From NCBI GenBank assembly GCA_001949185.1, contig BDGG01000003.1:2587158-2651157 (forward strand): a stretch of 64,000 nucleotides of DNA, in the 5' to 3' direction. Source of the stretch: Ramazzottius varieornatus (Eukaryota; Animalia; Tardigrada). The notes beneath the pieces are model-generated. The model saw only the letters and a list, made by a program, of their open reading frames with translations. It searched no databases and had not been told where the DNA came from. Below are positions 1,661-58,145 of the stretch, one piece after another; positions within the stretch are counted from its first letter, which is position 1; every line of letters starts with the position of its first letter. The position numbers were made by a program, and so were the translations under genes.

Positions 1661-4600
1661 TCAACAGATCCCAGAGACGTCAACGTTGACAGTAGCGATG
1701 GCCTTGGCTCCCGGGGTGGAGCCAGTTGCCGACACCTCAAAAGTTTGACTGGCGAGGACTGGGCGGTAAACCTGTGTGCGAATTTCTCCGGTATTTGAGT
1801 CAATGTAGAAGTTGTCCGAGTTCAGCGAATAGTTGACCGCTCCGATGTCTAAATTAGCCATGTGCGCCTACAAAAAGAGATCACGATGTTTTCCAAAGAA
1901 AGACCGATCAAATACATGTGTGGTACATTTGGATAGAAATCATAGTAGTTACGACGTGGACCCGCGTTGCCTGAGCCATGATTTCTATTTTGATGTCACT
2001 TGTTCGACGTTTTTGCGAGAACTGGTTCCAAAGACCATCTCGGACGAAAAGGTTTCTTTCAGATAATTTTTTATTACCGTAACGACTCCCACTCTTGAAG
2101 TGGTATACCCTGGCGAGCACCTGATAGAGAAATGGTATTTTGGCTTGTCAAAAACCACTCCAGTCGGAATGGCCGCTGATTTTGCATATGGGTCGCCGCG
2201 ACCGGGTTCATAATATGGGATGTTATTGTTCATCGGGTATTGACTTCCACTGTACTGTGGCTGTCCATAGCTAGTTGAGGGAGCTGGACCTATCACGGGA
2301 GGATTCTGCATTGGGAAGGACCCGAAACTCGGAGCAGGTTGGGACGGGATGACCTGTGCCTGTCCACAGCTAACAATAGCCGTTGCGTAGCTTGATGTGG
2401 AGGCCCCCACAGCTTGGATGAGTAAGGCCTGAGAACCCACGATGTTGGTCCCTGTGACGGTGATGGCGCCTGTCTGAGGATTGATGGAGAAGCCCGAACC
2501 ACCTCCAGCAATCGTGTAAGATGGATTACCACCCGCTGTGACAGTGCCCACGGGAGAACCAGGCTGACAAGTTGGTGGGTTGAAGTTGTATGTCGTTTGC
2601 GTGAAACCACTTGAGGAAGGGACTCCTCCAGAGCCTAGAAAGTTAATAACTGTAAGCCTGAGTACTGTTCCGGACTTTACGACGTTGCACACTTTAGTAG
2701 TCTGACTTCAAGCCAATTCCGATCCTTGCGATTCAAGAGCATGTCAGTTACGTAATTCTATCTTTTGCGAATGCAGGAGGGCTTATCGTCTTCCAGCCGG
2801 TCCAACTTACAGTACGACTGCGACCAGTTAGGACGTCGGTAATTGTATTGGACATGATTGTCATCTCAAGTGGCGCACTTTTTCATTGATATTGACTGAA
2901 GGTGTGCGCCACTTGGGGAACGACGATGTTCGAGTCATTTGCCGACGCCCCCAGTTACTGCATCAATTTGGGGGTCTTAGTTTTCTATATTTTTGATGAG
3001 AAGCTCCTTCTTTTCGATCATGTATTTCGTACAAAATCTTCCTGGACGGTAAAAGCGGTTCTTGTACTTACCTCCCGTGCACAAAGCATTGACAGTAACC
3101 GTGGCGTAGAAGGTCCCCGTGGTGGACGCGGCGGAGACGAGGAAAGCTTGGGTGCCCGAAATGACTGGTCCATTTATAGTAATGGACCCACTGGTCGGAT
3201 CAATGGCAAACCCCGTGCCACCAGCAGCAATTGCGTAGCGTGGTCCCGAGCCGGCTGACACGCTTCCCACGACCGTTCCCGATGAACAGGAGGATGCCGT
3301 GAAGGTATAGGATGTACTCATGAATCCAGGAGTGCTCGAGGGAGTAACGGGATTGGTTCCAATTATAGGAACAGATCCGATGACTGGCACGGTGCCAATC
3401 ACGGGTAAGGTTGCGGTTGGAGCTGCAGTCCCGAGGATGTTGTTGCAGTTCGCAGTGATAGTGACTGAAGTAAAGGCCGCGCCAATTCCATTGTATGCGC
3501 CGATGATGACAGTAGTCGTCGAACCCAGGTCAGGGTTGTTGACTATACCGATGGTTCCATCATACGAGATACTGTACTTCAGAGTGTCACTGATCACCGC
3601 ATACTGCGAAGAAAATGAAATTACCGACCAAACGTAAGGAGCTTGGCAAAGAAGTTGGGCAGATCGTTTTTGCACGTGGCGCACGCTTCCAGTCAATAAC
3701 ACCGAAGGTGTGCGCCGCTTCGGGAAACGAGCTTGTCGAGCAGCTCCGGAAACATTACATGCTTCACTTTATGGACAATTAAAACCTGCCATCTTCCAGG
3801 TTTTTTCGCCATGTTTCATGACGTGTTTTCTTACCGTGTTGGCGTTGGTTGCAGAAAGTGTCCCGACAGGAGCGCCCAGTCTACAGTCTGTTATGGTTAC
3901 ACTGGAAAAATAATATCCTAACTTCATAAGTTAGTCCAACTAGTACTCCAACGAACTTATCACTGACGCATGAACAATAGTTTTCGTGCAGGGCGTACTC
4001 TTACCTGTAAGCTTCTTGACTAAACACCGGCGCTCCGGCCAAGTTGACGTTGGCACTGCCGACACCTGCCGGACAACTCTTAGTCCTGATAGTCACCAGC
4101 GTGTACGCTGTCCCCAGATTATTCGTCGCTCCTACTACAAAGGTCTGTGCGCCAGGCGACACCGACGACGATATCTTGATATTCCCGTTATTATCGATAT
4201 CATAGTCACTGTTCCCCAGGATAGCATAGCTAGTGGGTCCGTTATTGGCCGTGATACTCGCCACGATCGAGCCACTCTTACATACTCTCGTTGTGAAACT
4301 GTAGCGGGCGAGGGTCCACGTCGGTGCTGCGGTGGCAGTAGCTGAGCCAGAGGCCGAGCCGTTAAAGATAGCGACGGTCACTTGGGGCTTGGTAGCTGTG
4401 AGGATGTTAATCCTGACAAGACTGTCGCAGGTTTGACCAGCCGAATTGGTGGCGCGGACGAGGAACTCGAGAACGGACCGGGCTTGTCGATGAAAGCTCC
4501 GAGTGACGTTGAGGGTCGTGATGTTAACCGTGGTGAAGATATCACCAGTGGTAGGGTTTATGGAGAAGGTTTGTAGGGATGTATCGGGGATGGACCATGT

Positions 4601-4957
4601 CAGGGCGAGACCGTTGGGGTCGACGGCGGAGACTCGGGTGATGAAAGTGCCAGCTGCGGCGGTCTCCTGGATCATACCGCTGTAGTATGGTCCAGAACAG
4701 ACAGGGTTCCCACCCAGGGCGGTAGCGATGAATTGACGGCCTTGGCGGGTTCGCAAGGTTGAATTTCCTTCGGTCTGAAAAAAAGGGGCATTAGAATTCC
4801 GACACCCATGTTAGACAAAGTGCGGGAGAATGAATGTCTGTCTTACAAGAGGCTCTGATGAATTTGTCAGGCGGTCAGCTTTGGTGGCTACCGTTGAGAA
4901 ACACGAAAGAAAGAAAAAGACCAAAAAGATTAGATAGCAGTTTGAGCGACAGTCCAT
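1661..4957 (-). CDS. Secreted protein with ~6 cadherin-like repeats and no TM segment (~747 aa); cluster gene 1
   Basis: Phase-consistent GT-AG exons 4957-4847, 4774-4005, 3901-3835, 3603-3072, 2634-2078, 1867-1661. Signal peptide MDCRSNCYLIFLVFFFLSCFSTVA, then RQGR-Q. Repeats follow F-x4-Y-x-F...C..G..VG.V...Y.I.....F.I....G.I...V.V.C. The first repeat (GTFITRVSAVDPNG...FSINPTTGDI) is closest to canonical cadherin. Confidence 0.8.
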
Positions 4958-5929
4958 ACTGAAAGCTCCAGAAATCTTCCGCCAGAAACCTGTAGCTCGT
5001 TTGTCAAGATATCTCACGGTTGCGTTACTGATTGACGGATAAGATTTGTCATCGCACACGAATTTGTAGCCGCGGTGGGATCGCCATCTTGTAAGATTAC
5101 TCTGTTGCTCTTTGGTATTATTGAACTTCACACCGGTAAAGCCTGACCAGAAATCACGGATTCATGGTAAAAAGTATCGGGATCGGTGTTTATCTTGCAA
5201 GGTTGTCTAATCTATGCCAGGTGAGCGCCGCAAGACTGTATACGTGTTACTGTTATTCGGCGGACCAGTCTGGTAGCTTGCCAGACAAAATATCCGCTGC
5301 AAGTCAGTTGCAGGCTGGTTCTCGAAACGTACTGTAAATTCGTAGAGAGTATCTGGATTATAACTGCCAAGGTCTCCGCAATTTTTCAAGGATTTCTTTT
5401 CGTTCTATCACGACGCTGACCGGACATTTTTCGTACTTCTCGTTGACAGTGGCGCCACCGGGAGAGCCCCAACTTACTAGAGGGATGTCTCCACAAATGG
5501 GGGCGCCACTGGGTGAACTATATTTATGAACATGACCGAGTTAGATAATCCTTCTGCTTATAGAATTGGAAGGTGAACATCAGAGAGAAAAATTTGCAAC
5601 TGTTGTCGAAGTCACAGATCACCAGGTCAGTTTTGTTTCTGATAACCCAAAGAATGCGCAGTATAGGCAAAAGTCAGCTTAAAGAACAACACTCGGCCCA
5701 GTGCCACAAAAGTCTCACCTTGATGACCATTTGTTTTTCTTGACCTCGGATCGGTGGACGGCACTTTTTTGAATGTCAAGTACAAGAGTTATGCAAGCGA
5801 ACAACATGGGATGAATTCACCTTCCGCGGTTCGAACAAAAGCTCGACGATGAAGTAAAAAACAGCGCGGATATTGTTTCAATGCCAACAGCGACTGCTGC
5901 CTCTGGAGAACTCTGGTAAGAAGGAGCCA

Positions 5930-5935
5930 TATAAA
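5930..5935 (+). promoter_or_regulatory. Putative TATA box of cluster gene 2
   Basis: TATAAA ~85 bp upstream of the ATG at 6018. Confidence 0.4.
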
Positions 5936-6017
5936 CCCCGAAAGTTGAATTAAGTGCTCGTTCACATCAACAGTATTTTATCAAGTCCTCCCTTTTAGTC
6001 TGATTCAAGTGGCTAAA

Positions 6018-7473
6018 ATGGAGAACTTTATCTATTCGATTTTCTTTGCAGTGGCTGTTCTCCAATTCGTTTCCGGCGAGGTACGTCGCAATCTTCCAGT
6101 TTCTTTTCCATTGGTTTCACGAACTTTCACATGTTGTTTTCCGCAGAACTCCACAGTGTCAGAGAAAACATCCATCAGAGTCTTCAAACGGCAAGCTTCT
6201 ACCCCGACTTGCTCAGCTCTTCAAGCGACCCTGACATCGCAGTCTCCCGGCGCGACGGTCGGAACTGTCACGAGCAGCGACCCACGAGGCCTGACGGTCT
6301 GGTACACCATCCCCGATGCGACCTACAACCAGTATTTCGCAGTCAACCCCTTCACCGGAGTTATCACCACAAGCGCTAACTTCAACAGCGGGTTCCTGGC
6401 GGGACGAACCAACTTGCAGTTCAATGTTCAGTCCACCAACACAGCCGGCGGCGTAAGTCGTTTTCCACCCTTTTTGTGTCAAAGCGTGCAAGAAGTGGGC
6501 AGATGGAATAAATCAGATCGCTTTCCAGAGTGGCGCGGATTCTGATTGTGGTTGGCTGAAGAAGTGCGCCACTCATAAGAGTGATCTAGTTCAGTTCATT
6601 TGCCCATGTTCAACTCAACTTGACTTTCGTGCTTCCAGACTTGCGTGACGCCAGTAACCGTCAACGTGGCTGGCTCTACCGGTTTGGCTCCTGCTTTTCC
6701 TCCAGGTGTGCCCCTCCCAGCTCCTCCGCAAGCTATCACTAACGCTTGTGCCTGCGGGCCTGGCTATTATTGTTGGGAAAACAACTGCTATCTCAAGTAT
6801 AATCCAGGTATCACTCCTCTCGGCAGCACCAACAACGGGCTCGGGGTCGGTGGTGGGTTCGGTCACTTCGGGGGAGGAGTCAGTTCGGGTTTTAGGGCAC
6901 CGTGGGGCGCTTCGTCATGTACCGGGAATGGCTGCTACCTCAACTACCCCAACCTCTTCTACACCGCGGTGAATAGGACGACAGGAACCAGCGGTCTGTG
7001 CTTTTTCGGGCTATGCTTCAACCAGACCAGTGCTACCTCTTCGGTCTCAGCTACCACAGTCGCCTCAGTCACGACCGCGACGGTCACAGCTGCGACAGCC
7101 ACTAGCGCTACGGTGATTAGTGCTACGGTCCTTACTTCTGTCACGCCTATTTTCGCTTCGTCAGCGTATCTGTTTATCACGTCGAGTTGCGCAGCTGGCA
7201 CCACAGCAGGTAAGCAAGATATTATCCAATTCATTTAACTTATGCAAAAATTGGAACGTTTAATATTTTTCAGGTACTGTGAGTGCGTCGAATGCTGCCG
7301 GATATAGCATCAACTACGGGAGTGGTAATTTCGCCATCAGTAGTGGCGGTGCAATAACCCTATCTTCGGCTTTGGGCACGGGAGTGTACAGTCTCACAGC
7401 TGTCGCCACTAGTAGAAGTGGTCAGTCGAGAGCTGTACCCGTAACGGTCAGTGTTGTCTGCAGTACCGGATAA
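6018..7473 (+). CDS. Secreted protein with 2 cadherin-like repeats, CX4C motifs and a Thr/Ala-rich linker (~379 aa); cluster gene 2
   Basis: Exons 6018-6080, 6147-6452, 6639-7209, 7274-7473 (1140 nt, in phase). Signal peptide MENFIYSIFFAVAVLQFVSG, RVFKR-Q site, GATVGTVTSSDPRG...YFAVNPFTGVI, and motifs YCWENNCY, SCTGNGCY, LCFFGLCF. Confidence 0.8.
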
Positions 7474-7580
7474 AAGATTGCGCGAGTATGAACGTAGTTC
7501 GCACAAACTATTGTACTTTTTAATTTTCTCTTCAACAAGGACGTTACTCAGAAGAATAAAACAAACATCGAAGCGACGTA

Positions 7581-8297
7581 TTATCTTCTTCGGCCATTAA
7601 GGATAGTTCGGTCAGGTCTAAAACATGCTCCAGCCACGCAGACACGCCCATGCCCATAACCATTATAATTATTCGACAAGCCATTATAATAGTAATTTCC
7701 GTTGTTCAAATAATATGGATAGCTGTTATCCGATCCAAAGTAGAAGGAGTCTCCGTCCGAATCGCTCCATCTGCTGTTCCTGATCCCGTAGTACCTGGGG
7801 TTATACCCGTAGGCGTTGTTCTGAGTTCCACAACGACCATTGGCGCAACTATAGCCTGTATTGTAGTACGGGGAGGTAGGGTACACCGGCGCCGTTGCGT
7901 AGTATGGACTTTGGTAGATGATGGGAGTTTGGTACACTGGTTGGGTATACGTGACAGGAGTGTAGCCGGTACAGGACGCGATGATCGTTACGGGAGCACT
8001 GCTGAGAATACCGGAAGGGCTGCGGCTGAAGACGTTGAAGTTAATGTTACCGGTGAGGGTTGAGAGAACGGTCAATTGACCGGTCGATGGATTGACGCTG
8101 ATGTTGGGGTTGTCCGTTGAGTAGGTGCCGCCCGCGACCGCCGAGACCTGTCCGATGAACGTTCCTGGGGTGCAACTGGAGATCGGGAAGGAGTATGAAG
8201 AGGCGGAGAATCCTTGAGTGACTGTTTGGCCCGAAGAACTGTGGGAGAGGCTGAAAATCAGTCCAACAAAGACGGCGAGTTTTTCTTGCGACGACAT
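7581..8297 (-). CDS. Single-exon secreted protein: one cadherin-like repeat plus a Tyr/Asn/Gly-rich tail with CX4C motifs (238 aa); cluster gene 3
   Basis: Signal peptide, FSASSYSFPISSCTPGTFIGQV...SVNPSTGQL...VTIIASC, and motifs SCANGRCG, VCVAGACF. TATAAA on the - strand at ~8395-8400. Confidence 0.8.
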   Translation of the reverse strand: MSSQEKLAVFVGLIFSLSHSSSGQTVTQGFSASSYSFPISSCTPGTFIGQVSAVAGGTYSTDNPNISVNPSTGQLTVLSTLTGNINFNVFSRSPSGILSSAPVTIIASCTGYTPVTYTQPVYQTPIIYQSPYYATAPVYPTSPYYNTGYSCANGRCGTQNNAYGYNPRYYGIRNSRWSDSDGDSFYFGSDNSYPYYLNNGNYYYNGLSNNYNGYGHGRVCVAGACFRPDRTILNGRRR

Positions 8298-9504
8298 TTT
8301 GGCTGGTTGAGTCCTTCAAAGGTCGAATCGCTCAAAAAATGCCGGAAAAGTATCTCGATGGTTAGGACGGAAAAAGGAGTTTTTGGCTTCAGAGTTTATA
8401 ACGGGCCTGAATTTGTTGCTTTGGTGGCAAAATATTTACCTGGCACTGTGAGCCATTTTCACCCCTTTGTCCTCCTTTGTTGAATGCAATAACTTTCCCG
8501 GAAACGCCCTGTTTCGACGACTTTGCTGACGCGCGATGATACATCGGAATGTGAGTTATTGTTTAGCTTACAGGATTATACGGTATCCGCTATTTTGTTC
8601 GCTGGATGCCTAGACCTACCGCCCAGAAATGGTGTCTACGACCCGGAAGTTCTCTGCGGAAGCCTGCGCTCGAATGTTTCTTGCGTCCCTCCCGTCTGCA
8701 CGGTGACATTATTTACCGCAGGGGAAGAAATATCCATCGCTAAGTGTGCCGGTTTTTAAATGAGAATTAAGCATTAATTGGCGTTAATGTTCTTGGCATA
8801 CATGTCTTGACCGTTGTCCACGCTTATGGATTTCCTTCTGTCGGCGTAGCTTCGTCTACCCTAATTGATATTTCGTACACTTCTTCTTCGCTCATGTTGT
8901 ACATGAGCAGATGTCTGCCTTGAATGTTCTATGAGATCGGACGTTTCGCGTGGTGTCAATTTAGTCTTCTCGCGCCTTCGCCACGAGAAGTTACTTTCGA
9001 TACCCCACCCTCTTTTCTCTGTGTTTCTCCTGTTGTCGAGGGGTTGTTTTGTGTGTTTGCACATTTGCGTACTGCTGAGTGCACGTACTATACGTTTGAC
9101 GTTTCCCAATAAATGCTAAATTAGCACGTATCAGTTTGAGGTCCCATGTAAGCCGATAACATTAATGTAAAGCAGTGAGAAGGAAGAACAGGAAGAAACT
9201 AAAAACTATCAATATGTGTGCAAACCACCACAAGAAAATGAAGCCGGCGAGAGACTACCCAAGAAAAGCAGAGTATCTAGCAAAGTAGCGAGCGAAGTGT
9301 ATTAACTTCAGCGCCGAGTTCATCAATCAAGCAGTCAAATGCATTTCCCGATTGATTGATTGATTGATTTGCTGAATCGAAATACACAGGTGATGCGCAC
9401 ACATGTGCAGTTTGGTAGACTCATGGTACATATTGCTACTAACACCCATGATCCTCTAGTGCGGTGTACTCCGAATCTACGTTTTTTTCTCTTGGGTACA
9501 GTCT

Positions 9505-10119
9505 TTAGCTCCACCTAACACCACTGTACCAAGGATAACCATAGCGAGCTTGGTTGTAAGTTGTAGAAAAACAATAACTATCGATACAGAATTTATCGTC
9601 ATTTGAGCTGGAACCTCCAAAGGTGGTTATGTCGCTATCATAGCACGCTCCGTTCTGGCACGTTAGTCCGCCATAGGTGGTCGACGCACTGTTTGAGGCA
9701 CTGGACGTGAAAAAGCATCGTCCTCGATGGCAAAAGACGCGACCACTGTTGCTGGAATCATCTCCCGTTCCAGTCCAGTAGCAGTATCCGTTGTTACATG
9801 TGTATCCCACCGTAGGGTTTGTTGGACTGGAGTAAAAACCGTTCGGCGCACTGACCATTGGGGATACAACTTGGGGCACCGCCACCGCTGCTGGCGCCGC
9901 CACGAGCAGAGGAGCGGAAGACACGACGGTGGAACCCGGTACTGCCGCGGGAGCTTGAACAAAATTAACGACCTGCTGGAAAGCATCACTTGTCAAGGCC
10001 GGTACATTTGCAGGTATTGTGAGAGCAGGTATACTTACAGCAGCAGTCCGTGTTAGCCTTGCCCAAGAAGACAGGATGAACACCGACGATAAAAACAGTT
10101 TCCATAATCGATCCTGCAT
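9505..10119 (-). CDS. Single-exon secreted Ala/Pro/Val-rich protein with four CX4C-aromatic motifs (204 aa); cluster gene 4
   Basis: Signal peptide MQDRLWKLFLSSVFILSSWA, AAPAAVAVP stretch, motifs TCNNGYCY, FCHRGRCF, TCQNGACY, FCIDSYCF. TATATA at ~10207. Confidence 0.75.
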   Translation of the reverse strand: MQDRLWKLFLSSVFILSSWARLTRTAAVSIPALTIPANVPALTSDAFQQVVNFVQAPAAVPGSTVVSSAPLLVAAPAAVAVPQVVSPMVSAPNGFYSSPTNPTVGYTCNNGYCYWTGTGDDSSNSGRVFCHRGRCFFTSSASNSASTTYGGLTCQNGACYDSDITTFGGSSSNDDKFCIDSYCFSTTYNQARYGYPWYSGVRWS

Positions 10120-10703
10120 TCTAAAGCAGTATGGTGAAAATCGGGAAGATGAAACCCGAGATTATGGTTCACACGTTACAGGTTCTAGTGGTATACCCGA
10201 CCTTGATATATACCGCAAGTCAGCATTCCGGTTCTTCGGCAAACGTGGCTGCATGTTGGCGAAGAATTGTTTGTTTGGATAGCTGCTTTGCATCGATGAA
10301 CTGAAAGAAGTCGGGTAAACTTTAATAAACGTCAACATTCTCAGATCGAAAGGAATTCAGCTTGCCGAAGGACCTTTCACCAGATTTGGCGATGACATGG
10401 AGAGCCGTGTTGCATACATACTGTATATAAGCCCCACACGCAAGAGAGGTCCTGCAGAATCTTTTGAGCGACCTTGAAAACCTTTTATTCAGTCTTCTGC
10501 GCATCAAACATTCGTCTTCCGAAAAGCAGCCAAAACACACAAAATAAGTCACCACTAGAAAACAAGCAGTTGGCACCTAGCAGTGCAGAGCTAAATTCTA
10601 AGGTTACGTGCATTGACGAACTTATAGTCCGGATGGTCTACTGAAGTCAGAATGGACGCAGCAGAATTCGTCTGAAAAACTGTAGGAAAAGCCTGAACCC
10701 ACA

Positions 10704-13700
10704 TTATCCACCTCCGGCACAAATTAGGATGACCGTCGCACTGGTCGTCGTTGGTGTTCCGGTAGACGAGAATGATGTGATGGGCAACGTATAGGTCCCC
10801 GAAGTTCCCGTGACACCAGGGGTGATAGAGATCGTTCCAGTCGGCGAAATACTGAATGTCGTACTACCTCCATTGATAACATAAGAAATGGCTCCAGGGA
10901 CGGAGATTGTCCCTGCCGACTGTCCTCCTGCACAGTTAACCAAGGTAAAAGGACCAAAGCCGGTACTGGCCACCGTGGTGGTTACTACCCCTGTTCCAGT
11001 ACAGACAACTGCCACCGTTACCGGCACCGACACCGCCAGACCTTGTGAGGAAACCGCCGTGACGATCAAGTTGTACGTCCCTGTATTGACAGCTCCGACT
11101 GTCGACAAAGCTCCTGCTGTATTGATCGAGAACAGACCACCACCGTTACTAATAAAATAGTTCGCGGCGTTACTGGCTACAACGGACCCTAGTAAAACAG
11201 GACCTGTAGCGCAACCCTGAAGACTCAGCGAGTAACTCGTCTGAGGGAAGTACGGAGAGTATACAATAGTTGTGGGACCTTGAGTGGTCGTTGTGGTGGT
11301 CGTGGTGACGCTACTGACTGTTGATGGATAAACACAGTTGGTGGTGTTGATGATCACGATCGCGTTGGTCGGAACACCGTTGGAGTTATACGCAGTGACG
11401 GTCAGCGTGACGAATGTTCGCAGAGGAAGAACCGCAGTTTGCATGATATTACCAGTGACCGGATTGATGTAAAAGTAGTTGACCCAAGGGCCACTCTCGA
11501 TCCAGTAGGCGGTGTTGTTGGTGTTGTTCGTGATACCGGTAGCCGAAACCGACCCGATACTAGCATTGACACCGCAGGTTGTGGGCGTGAAAGTGTAGGG
11601 GGACTGGGAGAAGACTGGGGCGGCGTAGTTGAAGTTACAGTTGTCGTAGAGGCAGGTCCCGTTGATGGTCACGCTGGTAGCGCTGCTGGAGGACGACAGT
11701 AGGTTACAATTGACGGTTACCTTGACCAGCACTGAGCTAGTCTGGCCGAAGAGACTGGTGGCTTGGACTGAGAGGAGGTAGCGACCTGCGTTGATTGCCG
11801 TGGAGAGGGAGATAAGACCGGTGGAGGAAATGGTGAAAGCTGGGTCGCCGTTCGTGATGAAGTAGGACGCCGCACCGGCAGCCGAGACCGCACCAACGAT
11901 GGTACCGGCTGTGCAGTTCCGTGTGATGTATTTGTAACTTGCGATAGTATCCACTGTAAAAAGACGGTAAATTTGTGAGAGGGCTGGGATACAGGCAAAC
12001 AAACTCAACAAGGTCGTTAGTTAGTGGCGCATGCTTTCAGCCAATCACACTGGAAACGTGCGCCACTTGGTAAAAACAGTCCTGATTCGTTTTCAAAGTG
12101 ACGCACGTTTAAGGCCAGCAACATCGACCACGTGCGCCACTTGACAAAACTCAACAAGTTTGTTTCACGAAATCGCGCACACTTTCAGCCAATGATTCGG
12201 GAAACGTGCGTTACTTCGGAAAACAATTCTGTCGACTTTGGCTGCCGAACTGAGCGAACTCCCACATCGAACTTCGAAGGTTTCTATCGTACCCGAGTTG
12301 GCGTCATAGTCAATGACGCTGAAATGTCTCTTTTCCCGTCGGGCTTTTTTTGTGTTATTTAGACGAGCTCCTCGTTTCTTTCGACCAGTGGACGTCAAGA
12401 TGCTGACCGGCACCAGCGAGCTGTTACCGGTATTGCCGTAGCAGTTACCGCCGAAGCAGATGTAGTTGTAAGCGTTGACACCTGCCTGGCTCGCTGTGGT
12501 GCTGGTATTGGAAGTGAAGCTCTGGACGGCATTGTAAAAGGCCGTGTCGTAGTCGATGCTGTAATCGTCAGAGTCCGAGTCACAGGTCGCTGTAACCGTA
12601 ACACCTCGTCTGATCAGCCGTCCGGTGTTCGTTATAATATTGACATGGAGCCGATAGGTGCCCGTTGAGAGGTAGTCCGTCAGCTTGACGACCCCGGTCA
12701 GGTAGTTTACCGTAAACAAACCTAACAAAAACTATTTTGTTAATTTTTCTGAGAGACCGTTTTGAAAATTTTTGACAGAGTTAACCATATTTCTGAAATA
12801 ACTCGTGAAAGATGGAGTCTGGGCAAAGTTCCTCAGAAGTCTGGGGTCACGGCGTAGAGGCATAGTCGAGGAAATGTAGGCAGGGGGCGGGGTAGCCGAA
12901 GGGTAGGAGTCGGGGCTTGCCATCTGGAGGCCGAGAATCTTCAAGAAAAACTCAAAACCTTCCCTTGCCCTTCTCAAATTTCATCAGCTGTGCCTCTACG
13001 CTATGACCCCAGACTTTTGAGGAACCTTGCCCACAGCCCAGAAAATTGTCAAGTTTTAAATACTCAATAAATACATCACCAATAAGAATTTTTGATGATT
13101 CGTGACATTGCGATGGCCGATTTTTAGTATTACAGTCCGGTCGCTCGATATTTGGACGAAATCTGGACGAAATCTTCCAGTTTGAATTTGAGGCCCACCA
13201 TACATTCACCACACCGCATACCAAACCAAAGCCCAATATTACATAACACACACGTTACACCGTGCTATGACTCGTGTAATCAACTAATCAAGCCGCAGAT
13301 AACCGGCTGGGTGGGCATGGCGAGCAGTACGGTATACTTCGAATGGTTCTCCTCTTTTGAAATCGGAAAATTTCGTCCAGATTTCGAGCGACCGGACTGT
13401 ATTTTCAGCATGGTGTGGGTTTATGGAAAGGTTATGAAATTGCTTACCAGTGCATTCCGCGCCATTACAATAGCCATTGCGTTTACTGTTGATGGCGTAC
13501 CCCACAGCGCCTGTCGTCGCTACGGTTCCTATCCTGGTATTCGGTATACACTGCGTTATGGAGAAGGCATAGTTGTTGCCACCAGCCGTACTTCCGCTAC
13601 TGATGTTGTAGCAGAAGTTATTGTAGCACACAACTGAGATCCCATTGTTGAAGACGGCACTGGACACATCAGTGTCAAAGCCGTCATTATTACAGGTAAT

Positions 13701-14229
13701 GTACACCGGAACTGTCGCAGCACCGTAGTAGTTGGTGGCGCGGTAGTTGAACATGAAGGTCCCAGACTGCCAACTACAGTAAGACGGAGGAGCATCAGAG
13801 CGTATCAAAGAACGAACTTGAAAGATAAGATTCCACATACTCCGCCAAGTTAAGTTGTCCCGATCGTGGATTCACCGCCATGTTGTACGAGCCATCGGTG
13901 TCGTTGTCTATGGAATAGACGATACCACCACCGGCTGGATTGTTGGCCGTTACTAATGCGATGAAGTTGCCGGAAGCACATCGCGACAACGTGAAATTGT
14001 AGGCTGACTGCTCGAACGTGGGAGAGAACTCGGTGAACGGGTTGTACGGGGAAGCGATTGGACGTCTTCGAAACTGACCCAAGACAACCTGCAAAGGTAA
14101 TGACCATCAATCACACATCCTCGCAGTACTCGTATGGAAAGTGAAAAGAGGACCAGTGGTGCTTACCGCCAAGCACAAAGCCAGGAGGAAGATAAAGACT
14201 ATGTAGAAGTGGTTCCTTCCATTTGCCAT
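10704..14229 (-). CDS. Secreted protein with ~6 Cys-bracketed cadherin-like repeats and CX4C linkers (~713-726 aa); cluster gene 5
   Basis: Exons 14229-14167, 14088-13841, 13773-13487 (or 13448), 12721-12428, 11953-10704, in phase. Signal peptide MANGRNHFYIVFIFLLALCLA. Repeats such as FSQSPYTFTPTTCGVNASIGSV...FYINPVTGNI. Motifs VCYNNFCY, ICFGGNCY, TCLYDNCN. No TM segment. Confidence 0.78.
12023..12215. repeat. Tandem array (74-bp period, ~3 units) of the 45-bp AGTGGCGCAC palindromic element in an intron
   Basis: Units at 12023-12067, 12097-12141 and a degenerate unit at 12171-12215. Confidence 0.75.
12813..13040. mobile_element. ~228-bp MITE-like element with ~50-bp inverted termini (copy A, intron of cluster gene 5)
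   Basis: Left arm tggagtctgggcaaagttcctcagaagtctggggtcacggcgtagaggca pairs with right arm tgcctctacgctatgaccccagacttttgaggaaccttgcccacagccca. A diverged reverse-complement copy lies at 29041-29266. Confidence 0.75.
13133..13399. mobile_element. Tc1/mariner/pogo-type MITE (TA TSD)
   Basis: TA|CAGTCCGGTCGCTCGA ... TCGAGCGACCGGACTG|TA perfect terminal inverted repeats. Confidence 0.85.
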
Positions 14230-45247: not shown

Positions 45248-47840
45248 ATGAGTGACAATCCGCTGCCAACGATGTCAAAGGAGTGAGTATTCTCCTCAAC
45301 CTTCCATCATGAATTTCAGAAACCACTGCCTGCATGTACCTTGGGTGAAAGTCCATATCAGACTGTCTTTTTTGCGTATTGCAGGGATGTACCTCAGGAG
45401 AGCTTCTGGATTTGCAATTACTGTACGTTTGCTGAGAATCCCATAACAGTTGGACGATGTGTCGCTTGTGACAACTACAAGGGAATCAGGTACGTGATGC
45501 GTCGAATGTCACAGTATTCCGTATGATATCTCTGGATTGTCACCAAAGCACGTTCCGCTGCACAGATGGGCATCGCTGTAGTGCAGGCTGTGTGAGTTCT
45601 ACTAAACAGAATATTTTGTATGCTGTAGGAGTGAGCGGAACAAGACGCTGAGGGCTACAGTGTGGGACTTCACTCTTCCGGCAGACCGACCAAGAGAGCG
45701 TCGACCAGCGCCATCCCGAGCTACAGCCGGACGGACAGTCGTCACCAGACCAAACCTAGTGAAGGAGAGAAATGTAGCTGCCATTATCCAGAAGAATATC
45801 GGTACTGCTTTACGCGCAGCCAACCCAGCTCCACCTCCACTTTCGGTCGTACCCCAGCCACCAACACGATGTCAAGTAGCCAGAAAGAGCATGAAAGCTT
45901 TCCATAAAGAAGAAGAGACCCAACCAGATGAGGAACCTGTAACCGAAGTCGAGACTGTTAGATCACCGCGTACGCGCAAGATTAGGTCCAAACATCGACG
46001 TAGTCGAAGTATTACCCATCGTAGTTTCAGTCGTTTCACACCAGAGGCTTCAGAATCTTCCGCTAGTTGTTCGCGTTCTCGACTCCGACGGAACGCAGAT
46101 GTGTACGCTATGGTCAGTGAAGATGACACCACACAGTACTGGCCGGGGACGAAGTTTCCAACTGTACTACCAAAGAAAAAGAAGAAAAGATCGACAATAG
46201 TTTCATTCGACTCAAATCTGCATACTGTATCCATACCACAGGTTAGGAATACGTATGGGTATACGAATGAAGATAGTATGGAAAGTACCGAGATTCCGGA
46301 GCCTACAAACGTGTTTTCGGTCAATCGACTACATAAGCAAGTTCGTGAAGACTTTTCCTTGAAAAGCATTACCTGGACATCGGTGTCGCCAGTTTCTCCA
46401 CAGAAGAGGTCGAAGAGACGAACACGTCGAGTTGTTGAACTTGAAGAGGACGGGATTAACTCACCCGCGGAAGTCCGGGCTTCCACACCTAGATCGAGAA
46501 ACCGAGAATTGGATCCAGCTGTACAAGTCATGAAAATCGCCACGGACCAGCACTGGCGGATCCTGACGCAGAGGGAACAAAGAAGTGGGACAGTCAGTCC
46601 GACGAAAGGCCGGAGAGATGGACATTCAGGATCCTCAAGAGGCCTACAGGACAGTATCTCACCACTCAAGGCTCGCTCGTACGTATTCTGTTACTTTGTA
46701 CATCAGAAAGCATTTCTAATAGACCGAATGTGAGAAATATGATGCCAAACGTTTTTATCTATCATGCAGGGATCGCTCGCCATGTCGCCCGTTCTCGTTC
46801 GATCAGAAGAGGGTTTACGCTGAGGAGACTGACGAAGATGGTTCTTTGCGTCAGAAGAGACACAATAAGGGAATTCTGAAATACTCAGGAGTTTCGTTTG
46901 ACGATCCATCCAAAAAGTCAAAGTATTCTCCATCGGTGCCAGCATTTCCACGCAGCGTGTAAGTCTGAAACTGGAACACAGTAATGGGAGCTGGGCAAAC
47001 AGAACGTACGAATTGTTATTCCAAGTGGCGCACTTTTACTTTGGCAGTGGCTGGATTAGTGCGCCACTGAAGGGTAACGATCTGTGCGTATTCTTTGCTC
47101 GGCTCCCACCTAGAAGACAAAACTGTTTCTGGTAAGAGTGTCCGTGCTTAGTCTGACATTGTGTTTTCATTTAAGGGTGGGTAGTTTCAGTGGTTATAGC
47201 GGACTGACACGTTCGCCACGTCTGGCAGCAAGAGAAGCCTTCAAGTTGGTTCGTCAAGAGCCGTTAGAGAACTCTGTCGAGTCTTCCAGTCAAGAGTGGT
47301 CCGATGATCTTTACCAGCCAAATCGAGAACGCAAAAGGCGCATCAACATCTCGCTGGAAAAGAGAGAGTCCGGCAAGATCCTAAAGGATGGAAACGCGAT
47401 TTACAGGACCAAGAAGGATCCACACGTTCGCAAGAGAAAGGCTCGTCCACTGATCTCGTAAGCTTTCATGTTTTTGGTGTGATGGTGTTTGTTGGGTAAA
47501 CAGAACTGACGCTGAATGTTCTGTTCACAGAGTTGCTGAAAAGCGCAAAAAGCGACGGGAAAATGTGGTGCCGGTCGGAGCGGAAGTCGAAGAACCCGCT
47601 CCGATAAACAGTGGAAAACGGTAGGTTGTATCAGTTAACTTGTCGATTTCGTATGGTTCATTAGTATCGCTCAAACTTGAAATTTCATCTTATTTTAGAA
47701 CTGTGACGGCTAGCTTGTTGCCGAAGCCAGACGAAAAGATCTACAAGTTCGAGCGTTTCGTCGTGCCGCACGGCGAGGTCGAACTGGCTTTCGAAGAAAT
47801 GATCTTCTCCGATTATGGTTTCAGCAGCGATGAAGAGTGA
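45248..47840 (+). CDS. RanBP2-type zinc-finger protein with a long basic, Ser/Arg-rich disordered region
   Basis: MSDNPLPTMSKE|DVPQESFWICNYCTFAENPITVGRCVACD, a 357-aa central exon, and further exons ending FSDYGFSSDEE*. Internal exon structure approximate. Confidence 0.6.
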
Positions 47841-54439: not shown

Positions 54440-54907
54440 CTATTTTCCGAAATGCTCAAAGGACCCATGGCCGAAGCCTCCGAACATGGGGTATCCGAAG
54501 CCCATCATGGGATTCATGTGCATTCCACCAAAACCGCCCATCCCGTAACCGCCAAAGCCATGACCGAATCCACCAAACTTGTGCAAATCATCCCAGTCAA
54601 AGTCGCGTTTCGACGGTTCGCTCTTGGGTTCTTCTGCCGGTGTCAAGTCGATACGATCCTGTTTGGCGTGGACATGAGGCCGGAGTTCTACGTTGATTGG
54701 TGTCGTGGTCTGCTCCGAGGACGCAGCGGCAATCTCCACGTCGATGACAGGTACTTCCGAGGTAGGACGTTCTTCTCTGGTGAGTATCACACCTCCGCTG
54801 CACAATCCTGGAAACAAACTGAGGTCATGTTGTTTCAGATGGTGATATCGAAGACTGGACTTACCGAAGATCGCAGCGATGCTCAGACCAACCAGAATCC
54901 TCCCCAT
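54440..54907 (-). CDS. Secreted propeptide releasing a Gly/Phe/His/Met-rich C-terminal peptide
   Basis: Signal peptide MGRILVGLSIAAIFG|LCSG (intron ~54864-54808), acidic pro-region, KR, then DFDWDDLHKFGGFGHGFGGYGMGGFGGM...HFGK*. Confidence 0.7.
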   Translation of the reverse strand: MGRILVGLSIAAIFGKSSLRYHHLKQHDLSLFPGLCSGGVILTREERPTSEVPVIDVEIAAASSEQTTTPINVELRPHVHAKQDRIDLTPAEEPKSEPSKRDFDWDDLHKFGGFGHGFGGYGMGGFGGMHMNPMMGFGYPMFGGFGHGSFEHFGK

Positions 54908-56188
54908 ATTCACTCAAGTCCTAGGGTAACAACCTCGACACACCTAGAGAAGTCGATAGGTACCTGACTGAATCGAGACTGAAATCTGGGGTGAAGGCCT
55001 TCGAAGAAATATGCAGGACTGCTTCGTCTGAATACAAACTGATGTGCATGTTGATCTTTTAGACGTCTCCGGTACTCGTACAGAAAGAGAAAGGCTTTTT
55101 GAATGGTCAAGCAACCAGTCAGGGTGCTCCAATGGACGGTCATGGGGTGGGATCGACCAACTGGGACGATTTCTCGTCGAAAGGTGCTGCAGTTTTATGT
55201 CCAACGAAGTGATGGTCCAACCTATTGGAAGCGTAGGGTAAGAGGTAAGACTATCTGGTGCTTTCAGGGATAGATAGATTTATTTCAGCCTCGACAATCT
55301 GAATCTGGGACTTCTGAACTTAAACAATGTCGCGATCGATTGTGACTTTCTGGAATCAAGCTTTGTGTGGCTAGGTGATACAAAGCATCAGGTGCTGCCT
55401 CCTTGTTCCGTCAAGACAAACCAATGACACCAATTACACCAATTACTGTAGGAAAGGCGGCGCCATGCTTTGAATTACTGGCGCCAGCTTCTAATAATTA
55501 TTGGCTTATTATCCATTCTAGTTCTTCCAAACAGGCAGCTTAGGAATCTTCCTGAGTTTGCTGAATTTTTTCAACCACTGTACTTCGCCTACAGGACACT
55601 AAACATGACCAGAAGGACGACAACGTTTCCGTCATCTTAATATTTTCTTAATTTTGGGTTAGTTCAGACAGATTAGTATTGACACATCGACCTTGGAGCA
55701 AAGGGCAGAGATAGCTATACTCTAAACACAGTTTGATTTCCTGGAACGTAAATGTTGTGACCGTTGAGTAACCAAGTCAGTCGAAGCTTGACCGTAGTTG
55801 TTTGAGAGTCTTTCCGATTTCCAGTGTCAACGTTGTTCAATAGTTTTTCTCAGTGATGGGCCGTCGTACATAACTCGAATGTTCGAATTGATTTAGTAGT
55901 TCCCATGATCAGCAAACAAAAGATTTGAGTACGCTTCGTTAGAATCGAATAATTTCAAAACATGTTATGCAAGTTCTTTTATTCAGGAAGGCTTGAAACG
56001 GGGCGAATGTACGATAACATTTCAAGAGCCCGGAAAAACTCGGTCTATAAATCATGTTACTACTTTAGAATTTTAGCGGACTGTTGAGACTATAGATCCT
56101 TGCCGAAGAGACCCGTTTTCCGGAGCAGAATTTGTCCCGCTCTGATTTCAGTAAAGAAGTCATTACTGTTATAAAATCTGGATCAAGG

Positions 56189-58145
56189 ATGGCGCTCGAG
56201 ATATGGAGTGTCCTAACTGCGCTGATGTTCTCACAGGCTTCCAAAGTTTCCAGCACGGTGATGAGCTTCCCACCCAAGAACCCATCTTTAGCCGTTGGAC
56301 TTCATTCGACCGTCACAGCAGACCCGCGGTATACGGCATGGCCTGATCCGTCAGCCGTTTTGTACCATCTTGACAGTAACTACAGTAAGTGCAAGTCAAT
56401 TGTGTACCCGAAAGTCAAAATAAAAATTGGTATTGCTTCACACCTTCACGGTTTTTGCAGCAAGTATGGAGCGAATCATAATACAAGGCGCGATGATCAT
56501 TATTTCCACTGACATGACCCAGTGCATTCAGTTCGTCGAGTACGACCCTCAACGTGATGCCGGGAAGGACTTCCTATTCATCTCGAAAACGCTGAACGAT
56601 GGGTATGTACTACACCTGGGAAGCACAGCAAAAATGATTATGAGGTTGCTAATCTTTGGTTTCGTTTAATTTTGAAGCACGACCCCTCCGACCTGTGTAA
56701 CCTTCTTCGGGCGGGTAGTGCGGGCAGCCGGACGCGGGCAAAAGATGGTGATCCATAACGGACCCCACGGATGTATGAAATCCATGCGCGAAGTAATGAA
56801 GGTCCTTGTCAACGCACTGGGCTTACGCAATGAATATAGAAGACCAGACCGAGATCGCTTCATGCAAGTCAACTTTCAAAACATGATTCCGGGTAATTTA
56901 CGTCTCTTAAGTATGGGGTATAATTAAGTACGTTAATTACCGCCAATATATATTCTGACGTTCTGACAAGCTCCAATGTTTAATTATCGTAGAGCTGCGT
57001 GACACGAGCTTGATGAAGCCATACAACGAGTCGGAGGTGTACTATACCACGCTATTCGACTACCACTCATTGACCATTCTGCCGACTACAAAGTACAGCG
57101 CCGGAAACCAGACCATCTTTTCGTTTCCCAATGGCATCAGCGTCCCTACTATGGACTATCTCAGCCTCAATGACTGTATTGGGTTGTCCTGGATGTACGG
57201 ATGTGACGTCCGAAACTGCCTAGACCGTAAGAAGATCAACAAAAAGGATGAGATGTTTCCGTGTCATGCACCTCCATACTCTGCTCTGTACCGTTCACTG
57301 GTGGGTCTTGGTATGCAGGTGCTTGATGATCTAAAGCATGTGTTTTCCGTATTACCTTGTCGTAACAGTCCTTAACAGACACATTTTCGTGTGTAGCTTA
57401 CGCAACAGGAAGTGTAGGTCCTGTCGTGGTTACAAACGTTACTGTAGTTACCAGCGCCCCTGCAGCAGTCTCCTCGAACCCAGTCGCTCCGACAGCCTCC
57501 TCGGCTTCCGCCGTCACGGCTGCACGCACGGCCAAGTCGAGCGACATCGGTTTCGTCCTTCTCTCTCCCGAACAGTACAGCGGTAATACCAACGCATCCG
57601 GTACCACGAGCAACGGTACCAACACCATCTTCCACGTTGCCGGTTCCAATTCTGCCAACTCGTCCAGAGCGCTAGTCTTTGGCAAAGGACAGGTGCCAGA
57701 CATATCGAACGGTACCCAAAACGCCGCCGATGGTCGTGTGAACATTTCCGTCAGTTACGCAAGTGCACAGAATGGGTCTTCCGGTGGCGTCAAGACTTTT
57801 GTGTTAGACAAGAACATGACTTTAGCCGATATCATGGCCTCACAAACCGGTCCTGTGACGTTACATTTGGAGAACTTTTCCAACGCGACGGCCTATGTGG
57901 GTATCTATGGGCCACCAGGGTTCACTAGTAACTTCATCACGGCGTTGAACAGCACCGCGATAGTGTTTAACGGTACTGTGTCCTCGGTGGCTAACTATAC
58001 GACGTCGACCGGAAGTACAACGCCGGTTAGGGTGGAAAGCACGAGCTCGAGCGCGACAACGGTGTCGACTACAAGTACCACCACAACCACGGCGGCTCCT
58101 GCTACGACTGCCTACTTGCCTCCACTCCCAGTCCTTATCCCGTAA
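56189..58145 (+). CDS. Astacin-like (M12A) pseudo-protease with a Ser/Thr-rich mucin-like tail
   Basis: Signal peptide, WP..VLYHL, CIQFV, NALGLRNEYRRPDRDRF, FDYHSL..KYS, LSLNDCIGLSWMYGC. HExxHxxGxxH is replaced by KVLVNALGLRN. TATAAA at ~56046. Confidence 0.8.

What the first reader, a model, noticed from the sequence alone, without database searches (positions are those of the whole stretch)
1661..14229. Five-gene cluster of secreted cadherin-like/CX4C proteins: candidate structural (cuticle, egg-shell or adhesive) system
Seen: five adjacent genes all have signal peptides and no TM or cytoplasmic domain. They mix two modules: ~15 cadherin-like repeats (6+2+1+0+6) and CX4C micro-motifs, separated by Thr-, Ala/Pro- or Tyr/Asn/Gly-rich linkers. 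Gene 4 has only the CX4C motif and gene 1 only the repeats, while genes 2, 3 and 5 have both, which links all five. Established: classical cadherins are membrane-bound and calcium-dependent. Inference: a lineage-specific, probably co-regulated family of cross-linkable extracellular proteins (several genes have TATA boxes) that may assemble into one material.
Basis: partly seen in the sequence, partly recalled or inferred. Interest (0 to 1): 0.82.

Follow-up and report, generated by a model that had tools for sequence, protein, structure and literature searches.

The report
Tardigrade secreted calcium-free cadherin-repeat gene cluster
Five neighbouring water-bear (Ramazzottius varieornatus) genes encode secreted, anchor-less proteins built from cadherin-type domains that have swapped their calcium sites for a cysteine pair, mixed with tiny Cys-x4-Cys hairpin motifs; the family is found only in tardigrades and its job (probably an extracellular coat or matrix) is untested.

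Summary
Window 1661-14229 carries five intact genes. Each has an N-terminal signal peptide and no membrane span or GPI-type tail. They hold 6+2+1+0+6 = 15 cadherin-like repeats and 0+3+2+4+4 = 13 C-x4-C motifs (1.5 expected by shuffling).

The repeats are true cadherin EC homologues by profile (CELSR1 E 6.5e-27) and by fold (AlphaFold pLDDT 93.5; TM 0.76-0.84 to protocadherin-15, FAT4, CDH23). They lack all calcium motifs (no DxNDN or DRE; D 1.2%, E 0.4%). Instead 38 of 41 family repeats carry a conserved cysteine pair.

The genome is Ramazzottius varieornatus (gene 5 = RvY_07331). The repeat family has at least 12 loci there. Among 1.84 billion protein representatives gene 3 finds only 20 relatives, and every named one is a tardigrade protein.

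The C-x4-C genes are concentrated in this cluster. Gene 3's architecture recurs in Paramacrobiotus. Gene 5 has two furin-type sites exactly where a paralogue starts.

Function (matrix, cuticle, egg shell or mucus) and co-regulation remain untested. The intronic palindromes are a genome-wide repeat, not a shared regulator.

This scan noted the same family before on other DNA of this genome (s1-792726, s1-795490). I found no publication on it.

The parts
1661..4957 (-). g1: 6 exons (4957-4847, 4774-4005, 3901-3835, 3603-3072, 2634-2078, 1867-1661), 747 aa. Signal peptide, an EC1-like first repeat, four Cys-stapled repeats and a distinct last repeat that ends the protein (..SGIC). No CX4C.
   Evidence: First repeat passes the Pfam Cadherin cut-off at 34 bits. 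Same N- and C-terminal architecture as Paramacrobiotus XP_055331177.
6018..7473 (+). g2: 4 exons (6018-6080, 6147-6452, 6639-7209, 7274-7473), 379 aa. Signal peptide, EC1-like repeat, Cys/aromatic region with 3 CX4C (6771-6788, 6918-6935, 6999-7016), T/A/V/S-rich linker, one Cys-stapled repeat.
   Evidence: TATAAA at -88.
7581..8297 (-). g3: single exon, 238 aa. Signal peptide, one Cys-stapled repeat, Tyr/Pro then Tyr/Asn/Gly-rich tail with 2 CX4C (7830-7847, 7623-7640).
   Evidence: 70%-identical orthologue P0005. Same architecture in Paramacrobiotus XP_055354221 and XP_055354229.
9505..10119 (-). g4: 204 aa, or 183 aa if the in-frame 63-nt intron 10038-9976 is spliced. Signal peptide, Ala/Pro/Val linker, 4 CX4C (9781-9798, 9715-9732, 9643-9660, 9571-9588). 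No repeat.
   Evidence: All 8 Cys conserved in the 64%-identical orthologue P0030. No paralogue elsewhere in the genome. No Pfam family.
10704..14229 (-). g5 = RvY_07331: 5 exons (14229-14167, 14088-13841, 13773-13448, 12721-12293, 11953-10704), 771 aa. Signal peptide, 2 repeats, then 4 repeats; 4 CX4C (13611-13628, 13452-13469, 12441-12458, 11637-11654).
   Evidence: Last exon passes the Pfam Cadherin cut-off at 46 bits.
12327..12383 (-). Basic spacer in g5 with two furin-type sites: RKKR (12372-12383) and RREKR (RxKR match 12327-12338). It is followed by HFSVIDYDANS.
   Evidence: Paralogue RvY_07197-2 begins with a signal peptide followed by ..HHGEFSVIDYDANSVDTIASYKY, the same point, and shares the donor position.
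3073..3330 (-). Reference Cys-stapled repeat (g1 repeat 4, 86 aa) used for the structure model. Cys15 lies in the A-B loop and Cys84 just after strand G.
   Evidence: Alignment A3. AlphaFold2 pLDDT 93.5. Foldseek hits to cadherin EC domains.

Best explanation
The cluster encodes five secreted, anchor-less proteins of a tardigrade-restricted family.

Shown:
- The ~86-residue repeat is a diverged cadherin EC domain.
- It has lost its calcium-ligand residues. The loops that carry DxDxGxN and LDRE in CELSR1 are missing from the family profile in the best-aligned domain.
- It has gained a near-invariant cysteine pair, one in the A-B loop and one just after strand G.

Inferred:
- The two cysteines sit at the same pole of the domain where cadherins bind Ca2+. 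They form an intradomain disulfide that replaces calcium as the stabiliser.
- This would let the proteins stay folded in calcium-poor outside water.
- Repeats are joined by long Gly/Ser/Thr linkers, probably O-glycosylated, giving beads on a string rather than rigid rods.

The second module, [aromatic]-x-C-x-(N/G)(G/N)-x-C-[Y/F], is most simply a disulfide-closed beta-hairpin with a two-residue turn flanked by aromatics. It sits in Tyr/Asn/Gly-rich low-complexity stretches. I take these as the sticky or cross-linking ends (aromatic stacking, dityrosine or disulfide exchange, possibly chitin contact).

Together the five products most likely assemble into an extracellular coat or matrix: cuticle or another apical matrix, egg shell, or a mucus-like layer. 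g5 is probably cut by a furin-type convertase into a 2-repeat half and a 4-repeat half.
For: - Species and gene: 100% match to RvY_07331 of R. varieornatus.
- Cadherin homology: repeat profile against PDB gives CELSR1 6.5e-27 and PCDH15 2e-19.
- Cadherin fold: model pLDDT 93.5; Foldseek prob 1.00 and TMq 0.76-0.84 to PCDH15, FAT4, CDH23, CELSR1.
- No calcium sites: no DxND or DRE; E 0.8% in the five proteins; D 1.2% and E 0.4% in 41 repeats. In the best-aligned CELSR1 domain the DxDxGxN and DRE-type loops are insertions relative to the family profile.
- Cysteine pair: both present in 38 of 41 repeats, both absent in 2.
- Secretion without anchor: h-regions present, no TM. Orthologues end at the same C-termini.
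- CX4C: 13 observed against 1.5 expected. All Cys conserved at 64-70% identity. Motif present in Paramacrobiotus g3-like proteins. The low-confidence model of g3 draws the last motif as a hairpin.
- Lineage restriction: 20 hits in 1.84e9 representatives. Named ones are only Paramacrobiotus metropolitanus, Hypsibius exemplaris and R. varieornatus.
- Furin idea.
Against: - No expression, localisation or proteomic evidence was reachable, so 'matrix' is inference from composition.
- The disulfide was not measured, because model coordinates are not exposed.
- HMM alignment puts Cys15 one or two residues after the E11-equivalent, not exactly on it.
- The whole-g3 model is poor (pLDDT 39.7), so the hairpin reading of CX4C is weak.
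- No chitin-binding or cuticle family is matched in Pfam.
- NCBI's 'mucin-2-like' and 'spore coat SP96-like' names reflect composition only.
- Public models of g4 (117 aa) and of RvY_07331-2 start at internal Met and lack the signal peptide. My longer N-termini rest on ORF continuity and on orthologue P0029.
Confidence: 0.55

Rival explanations
1. Mucin-like lubricating or barrier gel (body surface, gut or buccal lumen) rather than a hard structural material. Folded cadherin beads would space heavily O-glycosylated Thr/Ser linkers, and the CX4C ends would multimerise the chains.
For: S+T is 23-28%, with Thr runs such as TTTTTTTTQGPTT in g5. Linkers between repeats are long and flexible. NCBI names the Paramacrobiotus relatives mucin-2-like.
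Against: No VWD, CysD or CK mucin domains. The Tyr/Gly/Asn-rich tails look more like cross-linked structural proteins. The NCBI names reflect composition only.
Confidence: 0.2
2. Soluble recognition or adhesion factors (for example microbe-binding immune lectin-like proteins, or cell-matrix adaptors) that use the EC1-like first repeat for binding.
For: Lineage-specific, tandemly clustered and fast-diverging: 64-73% identity to what are probably near relatives, and only ~40% to Paramacrobiotus. The first repeats of g1 and g2 are the most cadherin-like and keep an E11-like Glu and a D-P-N-G.
Against: g3, g4 and g5 lack the EC1-like repeat. The overall composition is very low in charge (K 1.1%, E 0.8%), which is unusual for specific binding surfaces. 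No immune-type domain is present.
Confidence: 0.12
3. The CX4C motifs are incidental features of low-complexity sequence, and the five genes are merely tandem neighbours without a joint function.
For: g4 and the g2 CX4C exon have no alignable paralogue anywhere in the genome. CX4C positions shift between Ramazzottius and Paramacrobiotus g3-like proteins. No evidence of shared regulation was found.
Against: 13 motifs against 1.5 expected, with no shuffle above 6. Every Cys and most following aromatics are conserved in orthologues. The motif is concentrated here and is nearly absent from 11 other family loci.
Confidence: 0.1

Closest known systems
Cadherin / protocadherin extracellular (EC) repeats (Pfam PF00028), e.g. 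CELSR1, PCDH15, CDH23, FAT4
   Same: Homologous seven-strand beta-sandwich, including the Y..F...G..VG.V.A, Y.I and F.I.P.TG.I sequence landmarks.
   Different: No Ca2+-binding motifs, shortened ligand loops, a conserved Cys pair instead, long flexible linkers, no TM or cytoplasmic domain, and secreted.
Calcium-free or partial-calcium cadherin linkers (e.g. protocadherin-15 EC9-10; own knowledge, entry 5kj4 appears among the hits)
   Same: Shows that EC repeats can work without the full set of calcium sites.
   Different: Those are single atypical junctions inside otherwise calcium-dependent membrane cadherins. Here nearly every repeat is calcium-free and disulfide-bearing.
Other members of the same tardigrade family: RvY_07197 (343 kb away), at least 10 further R. 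varieornatus loci, Paramacrobiotus 'mucin-2-like' XP_055331177, Hypsibius BV898_04646
   Same: Same Cys-stapled repeat, EC1-like first repeat, conserved intron before ..C.S.VR.NI.., and distinct terminal repeat.
   Different: The 11 other R. varieornatus loci I scanned carry almost no CX4C motifs. RvY_07197 has a different Cys-rich C-terminal domain.
CPCFC cuticular proteins of Pancrustacea (C-X5-C motif repeated 2-3 times; endocuticle; PMC12426002)
   Same: Small secreted proteins defined by a repeated short two-cysteine motif. CPCFC members have a cuticle role.
   Different: Spacing is 4, not 5. No Pfam match for g4, the g2 CX4C exon or the g5 exons carrying CX4C; g3 shows only weak cadherin-type hits. 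Different flanks. A functional analogy only.
Mucin-like protocadherin (CDHR5) and gel-forming mucins (own knowledge)
   Same: Combination of folded extracellular domains with Thr/Ser-rich stretches.
   Different: CDHR5 is membrane-bound and calcium-binding. Mucins use VWD and CK domains, which are absent here.

Membership tests
Cadherin superfamily (EC-repeat fold) | Sequence homology to EC repeats | tested here: met
   Repeat profile A1 against PDB gives CELSR1 6.5e-27 and PCDH15 2e-19. Pfam PF00028 is above cut-off for g1 exon 2 (34.1 bits) and the g5 last exon (46.2 bits). The other repeats are below cut-off.
Cadherin superfamily (EC-repeat fold) | Seven-strand EC beta-sandwich fold | tested here: met
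   AlphaFold2 on 41 repeats gives pLDDT 93.5 with 7 strands. Foldseek top hits are all cadherin EC domains, TMq 0.76-0.84.
Classical cadherins / protocadherins (functional family) | Inter-repeat Ca2+-binding motifs (E11, DRE, DxD, DxNDNxP) | tested here: not met
   No DxND, DRE or D.E anywhere. 41 repeats have D 1.2% and E 0.4%, and no column reaches 25% acidic. The ligand loops are absent from the family profile in the best-aligned CELSR1 domain.
Classical cadherins / protocadherins (functional family) | Transmembrane segment and cytoplasmic domain (or GPI anchor) | tested here: not met
   No hydrophobic 19-mer other than signal peptides and V/A/P linkers or strands, and no C-terminal hydrophobic tail. 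Orthologues end at the same residues.
Tardigrade Cys-stapled cadherin-repeat family (unnamed) | Conserved Cys pair (positions 15 and 84 of the repeat) with Y8, G22, Y32, G48, G72 | tested here: met
   Alignment A3 has these columns at 90% or more. The Cys pair is present in 38 of 41 repeats.
Tardigrade Cys-stapled cadherin-repeat family (unnamed) | The two Cys actually form a disulfide | not testable with these tools
Only topology is known: A-B loop and end of strand G, at the same pole.
CPCFC cuticular proteins | C-X5-C motif repeated 2-3 times; Pfam CPCFC match | tested here: not met
   Spacing is 4 in all 13 motifs. No CPCFC or other non-cadherin Pfam hit at E<=1 for g3 or g4, nor for the g2 CX4C exon, and none at E<=0.1 for the g5 exons carrying CX4C.
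Chitin-binding domains (ChtBD2 / hevein type) | 6-8 Cys domain recognised by Pfam | tested here: not met
   No chitin-binding family in the Pfam scans. The resemblance of C-x-N-G-x-C-aromatic to part of the hevein motif is from memory only.
Gel-forming mucins | VWD / CysD / CK domains flanking PTS regions | tested here: not met
   None found. Only Thr/Ser-rich linkers are present.

The most novel reading that the evidence does not exclude
Tardigrades re-engineered the cadherin domain into a calcium-independent, disulfide-locked building block and joined it to Cys-x4-Cys aromatic hairpins. The result is a phylum-specific extracellular material (cuticle, claw, stylet or egg-shell layer) that stays assembled in calcium-poor water films and through drying. 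On this reading the cluster is the core gene set of that material, with g5 processed by furin into two subunits.
Probability: 0.3. Interest if true: 0.72.

Novelty: new variant of a known kind. Interest (0 to 1): 0.5.

Why it matters
Cadherin repeats are the textbook calcium-dependent adhesion module of animals. A whole family in which calcium is replaced by a disulfide, and the proteins are released rather than membrane-bound, shows a new evolutionary use of the fold. It also gives a natural design for calcium-independent EC domains.

For tardigrade biology it supplies candidate components of the still largely uncharacterised cuticle, egg-shell or secreted matrices. These can be tested directly by proteomics of exuviae and by the gene-editing tools now available for this species.

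The value is limited for now, because the function is inferred only from sequence.

Tried and rejected
- Whole-g3 structure prediction with a 3-sequence alignment gave pLDDT 39.7, which is unusable.
- ESM Atlas look-up of g4 gave no usable hit.
I therefore could not fetch orthologue DNA, check synteny in other species, identify the ENA/Logan source species, or compute dN/dS.
I did not try again.
- Paper searches for the RvY gene ids, tardigrade + cadherin + secreted, tardigrade cuticle proteome, and Hypsibius moulting or cuticular proteins found nothing on this family.
- Supplement look-ups gave nothing useful. Hashimoto 2016 has no supplements held. Yoshida 2022 uses other gene ids. Yoshida 2017 only lists cadherin-annotated orthogroups without our ids.
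- The intronic GTGGCGCAC palindrome as a shared regulatory element is rejected: there are at least 1549 copies genome-wide.
- My first donor for g5 exon 4 (12428) is rejected in favour of 12293. That donor is supported by the public model and by the identical donor in the paralogue.
- Exons were joined only inside scripts, to count length, frame and stops. No joined protein was printed, saved, searched or folded. All searches were exon by exon, by reference.
Full report
**What is there**

The window is eukaryotic: GC is about 48% and genes have short GT..AG introns. The last exon of the fifth gene matches RvY_07331-2 of the tardigrade Ramazzottius varieornatus at 100%. The window is G000:C3:2587158-2651157.

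I rebuilt the five genes from open frames and splice sites:

| Gene | Strand | Span | Exons | Length |
|---|---|---|---|---|
| g1 | - | 4957-1661 | 6 | 747 aa |
| g2 | + | 6018-7473 | 4 | 379 aa |
| g3 | - | 8297-7581 | 1 | 238 aa |
| g4 | - | 10119-9505 | 1 | 204 aa (183 aa if an in-frame 63-nt intron is removed) |
| g5 | - | 14229-10704 | 5 | 771 aa |

Exons were joined only inside scripts, to count frame, length and stops. No joined protein was printed, searched or folded. Every search used single exons by reference.

- A profile of ten repeats (A1) finds all 15 repeats (6+2+1+0+6) inside 1661-14229 and none in the remaining 50 kb.
- There are 13 C-x4-C motifs (0+3+2+4+4). Residue shuffling gives 1.5 +/- 1.2, never more than 6 in 5000 trials.
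- Ten of the 13 motifs are followed by Tyr or Phe. Eleven have Gly or Asn at the two central positions.
- All five N-termini have a signal-peptide-like hydrophobic core.
- No other 19-residue window looks like a membrane span. None of the C-termini has a hydrophobic GPI-type tail.
- Independent gene predictions in other species end at the same residues: g3 (P0005), g4 (P0030) and g1 (Paramacrobiotus XP_055331177). This argues against hidden downstream TM exons.
- TATA boxes sit about 90-100 nt upstream of g2, g3 and g4 only.

**What the repeat is**

Pfam's Cadherin model passes its cut-off only for g1's first repeat and g5's last exon. The family profile, however, hits solved cadherins strongly: CELSR1 6.5e-27, protocadherin-15 2e-19, CDH23, FAT4.

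I collected 41 full repeats from the window and 11 other loci (A3). AlphaFold2 on this alignment gives a seven-strand sandwich at pLDDT 93.5. All top Foldseek matches are cadherin EC domains, with probability 1.00 and TMq 0.76-0.84. The fold and the homology are therefore shown.

The functional hallmarks of cadherins are absent:

- No DxNDN, DRE or D.E motif anywhere.
- The 41 repeats have 1.2% Asp and 0.4% Glu.
- In the best-aligned CELSR1 domain, the loops carrying DxDxGxN and the DRE-type triplet are insertions relative to the tardigrade profile.

Instead, Cys15 and Cys84 are near-invariant. Both are present in 38 of 41 repeats and both absent in 2. Cys15 lies in the A-B loop and Cys84 two residues after strand G. 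That is the same pole where E11 and the DxNDN linker hold calcium in cadherins.

That the two cysteines form a disulfide replacing calcium is my inference.

The first repeats of g1 and g2 are a distinct, more canonical EC1-like type with a different Cys pair. They are followed by an intron at a position conserved in many paralogues, just before '..C.S.VR.NI..'.

**The family**

The repeat profile finds 69 matches at 12 or more loci of the 55.8-Mb genome. These include RvY_07197, 343 kb away, and multi-repeat genes on C2, C9, C12, C17 and C27.

A full HMMER scan of g3 against 1.84 billion representatives returns only 20 proteins at E <= 1e-3. Their sources are as follows:

- Every named hit is tardigrade. 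Paramacrobiotus metropolitanus entries are auto-named mucin-2-like, protocadherin Fat 2-like or spore coat SP96-like. The Hypsibius exemplaris entry is BV898_04646.
- The rest are unnamed ENA, Logan or metagenome fragments.

XP_055331177 shares g1's first and last repeats end to end. XP_055354221 and XP_055354229 lie on one 252-kb contig and share g3's layout: signal peptide, one stapled repeat and an aromatic tail with CX4C. The family is thus at least as old as the split of Hypsibioidea and Macrobiotoidea.

**The CX4C module**

It is a micro-motif, not an alignable domain:

- g4 and the g2 CX4C exon have no paralogue in the genome.
- g4 and the CX4C-bearing exons of g2 and g5 match no Pfam family at the thresholds used, and g3 shows only weak cadherin-type hits.
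- g4 has no usable ESM Atlas neighbour.

Yet every cysteine is conserved in orthologues of 64-70% identity. The motif is concentrated in this cluster: the 11 other family loci carry at most one in-frame copy.

The pattern is hydrophobic or aromatic, x, C, x, (N/G)(G/N), x, C, Y/F. It fits a disulfide-closed two-residue-turn beta-hairpin. The poor whole-g3 model draws the last motif that way, but at low confidence.

**A processing site**

Between its second and third repeats, g5 has ..STG-RKKR-GARLNNTKKA-RREKR-HFSVIDYDANS... The paralogue RvY_07197-2 starts with a signal peptide followed directly by ..HHGEFSVIDYDANSVDTIASYKY. It also shares the donor position after ..DANS. This suggests that g5 is cut by a furin-type convertase into two secreted halves. 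This is inference.

**How it most likely works**

The composition points to an extracellular coat or matrix: S+T 23-28%, Gly 10%, Asn 7%, Tyr 4-10%, Lys 1.1%, Glu 0.8%. So do the Thr-run linkers and the paired cysteines. Calcium-independent folded beads would be spaced by probably glycosylated linkers, and aromatic Cys-hairpins with Tyr-rich tails would mediate assembly or cross-linking.

Independence from calcium would suit a location exposed to rain-water films. Which material it is (cuticle or another apical matrix, egg shell, mucus) cannot be decided here. Rivals are a mucin-like gel, soluble recognition factors, or no joint function.

**Co-regulation is not supported by anything I could test**

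The palindromic GTGGCGCAC-N25-GTGCGCCAC element shared by introns of g1, g2 and g5 occurs at least 1549 times genome-wide, against 0 for the reversed control.

**Comparison with known families, and novelty**

By fold and ancestry the repeats belong to the cadherin superfamily. They fail two defining features of cadherins proper: calcium sites and a membrane anchor.

The CX4C genes resemble pancrustacean CPCFC cuticle proteins (C-X5-C; PMC12426002) only in concept. Spacing differs and Pfam does not match.

I found no paper on this family. Databases carry only automatic names.

Earlier notes of this scan describe the same family on other DNA of this genome (s1-792726, s1-795490) and on this stretch (s1-809047, s1-809083). 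I re-derived the Cys-pair, calcium-loss and secretion claims independently on these loci.

**Verdict**

This is a real and well-defined cluster: a new variant of a known kind, moderately interesting, with function untested.

**Limits**

- No expression data could be reached.

Noticed in passing
window 2870-2912, 3676-3720, 6530-6572, 12027-12223 (three copies 74 nt apart), 165, 24683, 31833, 47025-47067: A ~43-nt palindromic dispersed element, GTGGCGCAC-N25-GTGCGCCAC, whose centre often reads ..TTTCAGCCAATAACACTGAAA... The 9-mer occurs 11 times in the window against 0.39 expected. Genome-wide there are at least 1549 perfect-ended copies, and the reversed-pattern control gives 0. It is a MITE-like or other short palindromic repeat of this genome, often in introns.
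   Followed up: partly
window 12722-13447 (g5 intron 3): The intron holds nested inverted repeats: 12813-12885 / 12968-13040 (73 nt, 79% complementary) and 13131-13162 / 13370-13401 (32 nt, 94%). It looks like a small inverted-repeat transposon insertion.
   Followed up: no
window 13448 vs 13487 (g5 exon 3 donors): Two in-phase donors exist, GTAAGC and GTAAAC. Using the upstream one would remove 13 residues (KRNGYCNGAECTG), which is exactly one CX4C motif. Alternative splicing could therefore toggle a motif. The public model uses 13448.
   Followed up: no
window 9505-10119 and 10704-14229: Public models look N-terminally truncated. The g4 protein on record is 117 aa from an internal Met. RvY_07331-2 starts at an internal Met in exon 2. 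Both therefore lack the signal peptide that the open frame shows and that orthologue P0029 also has.
   Followed up: partly
L001 (G000:C3:2242000-2247000), RvY_07197: This paralogue of the g5 C-terminal half (75% identity) has its own signal peptide and a different C-terminal Cys-rich domain of ~90 aa with about 14 Cys. A 73%-identical protein from an ENA assembly shares the domain.
   Followed up: partly
proteins P0006 and P0029 (Logan assembly): The g3 and g4 orthologues (91-92% identity) are both recorded on a longest contig of 3370 bp. They may be neighbours in that relative too. Both reads look frameshifted near their ends.
   Followed up: no
window 54440-54913 (-), 57426-58145 (+), 60263-61687 (-): Three further ORFs have secreted or low-complexity character: a Gly/Phe/Met-rich tail, a Ser/Thr-rich stretch, and a Pro-rich protein with a signal-peptide-like start. 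They may be other matrix-type proteins in the same 64 kb.
   Followed up: no
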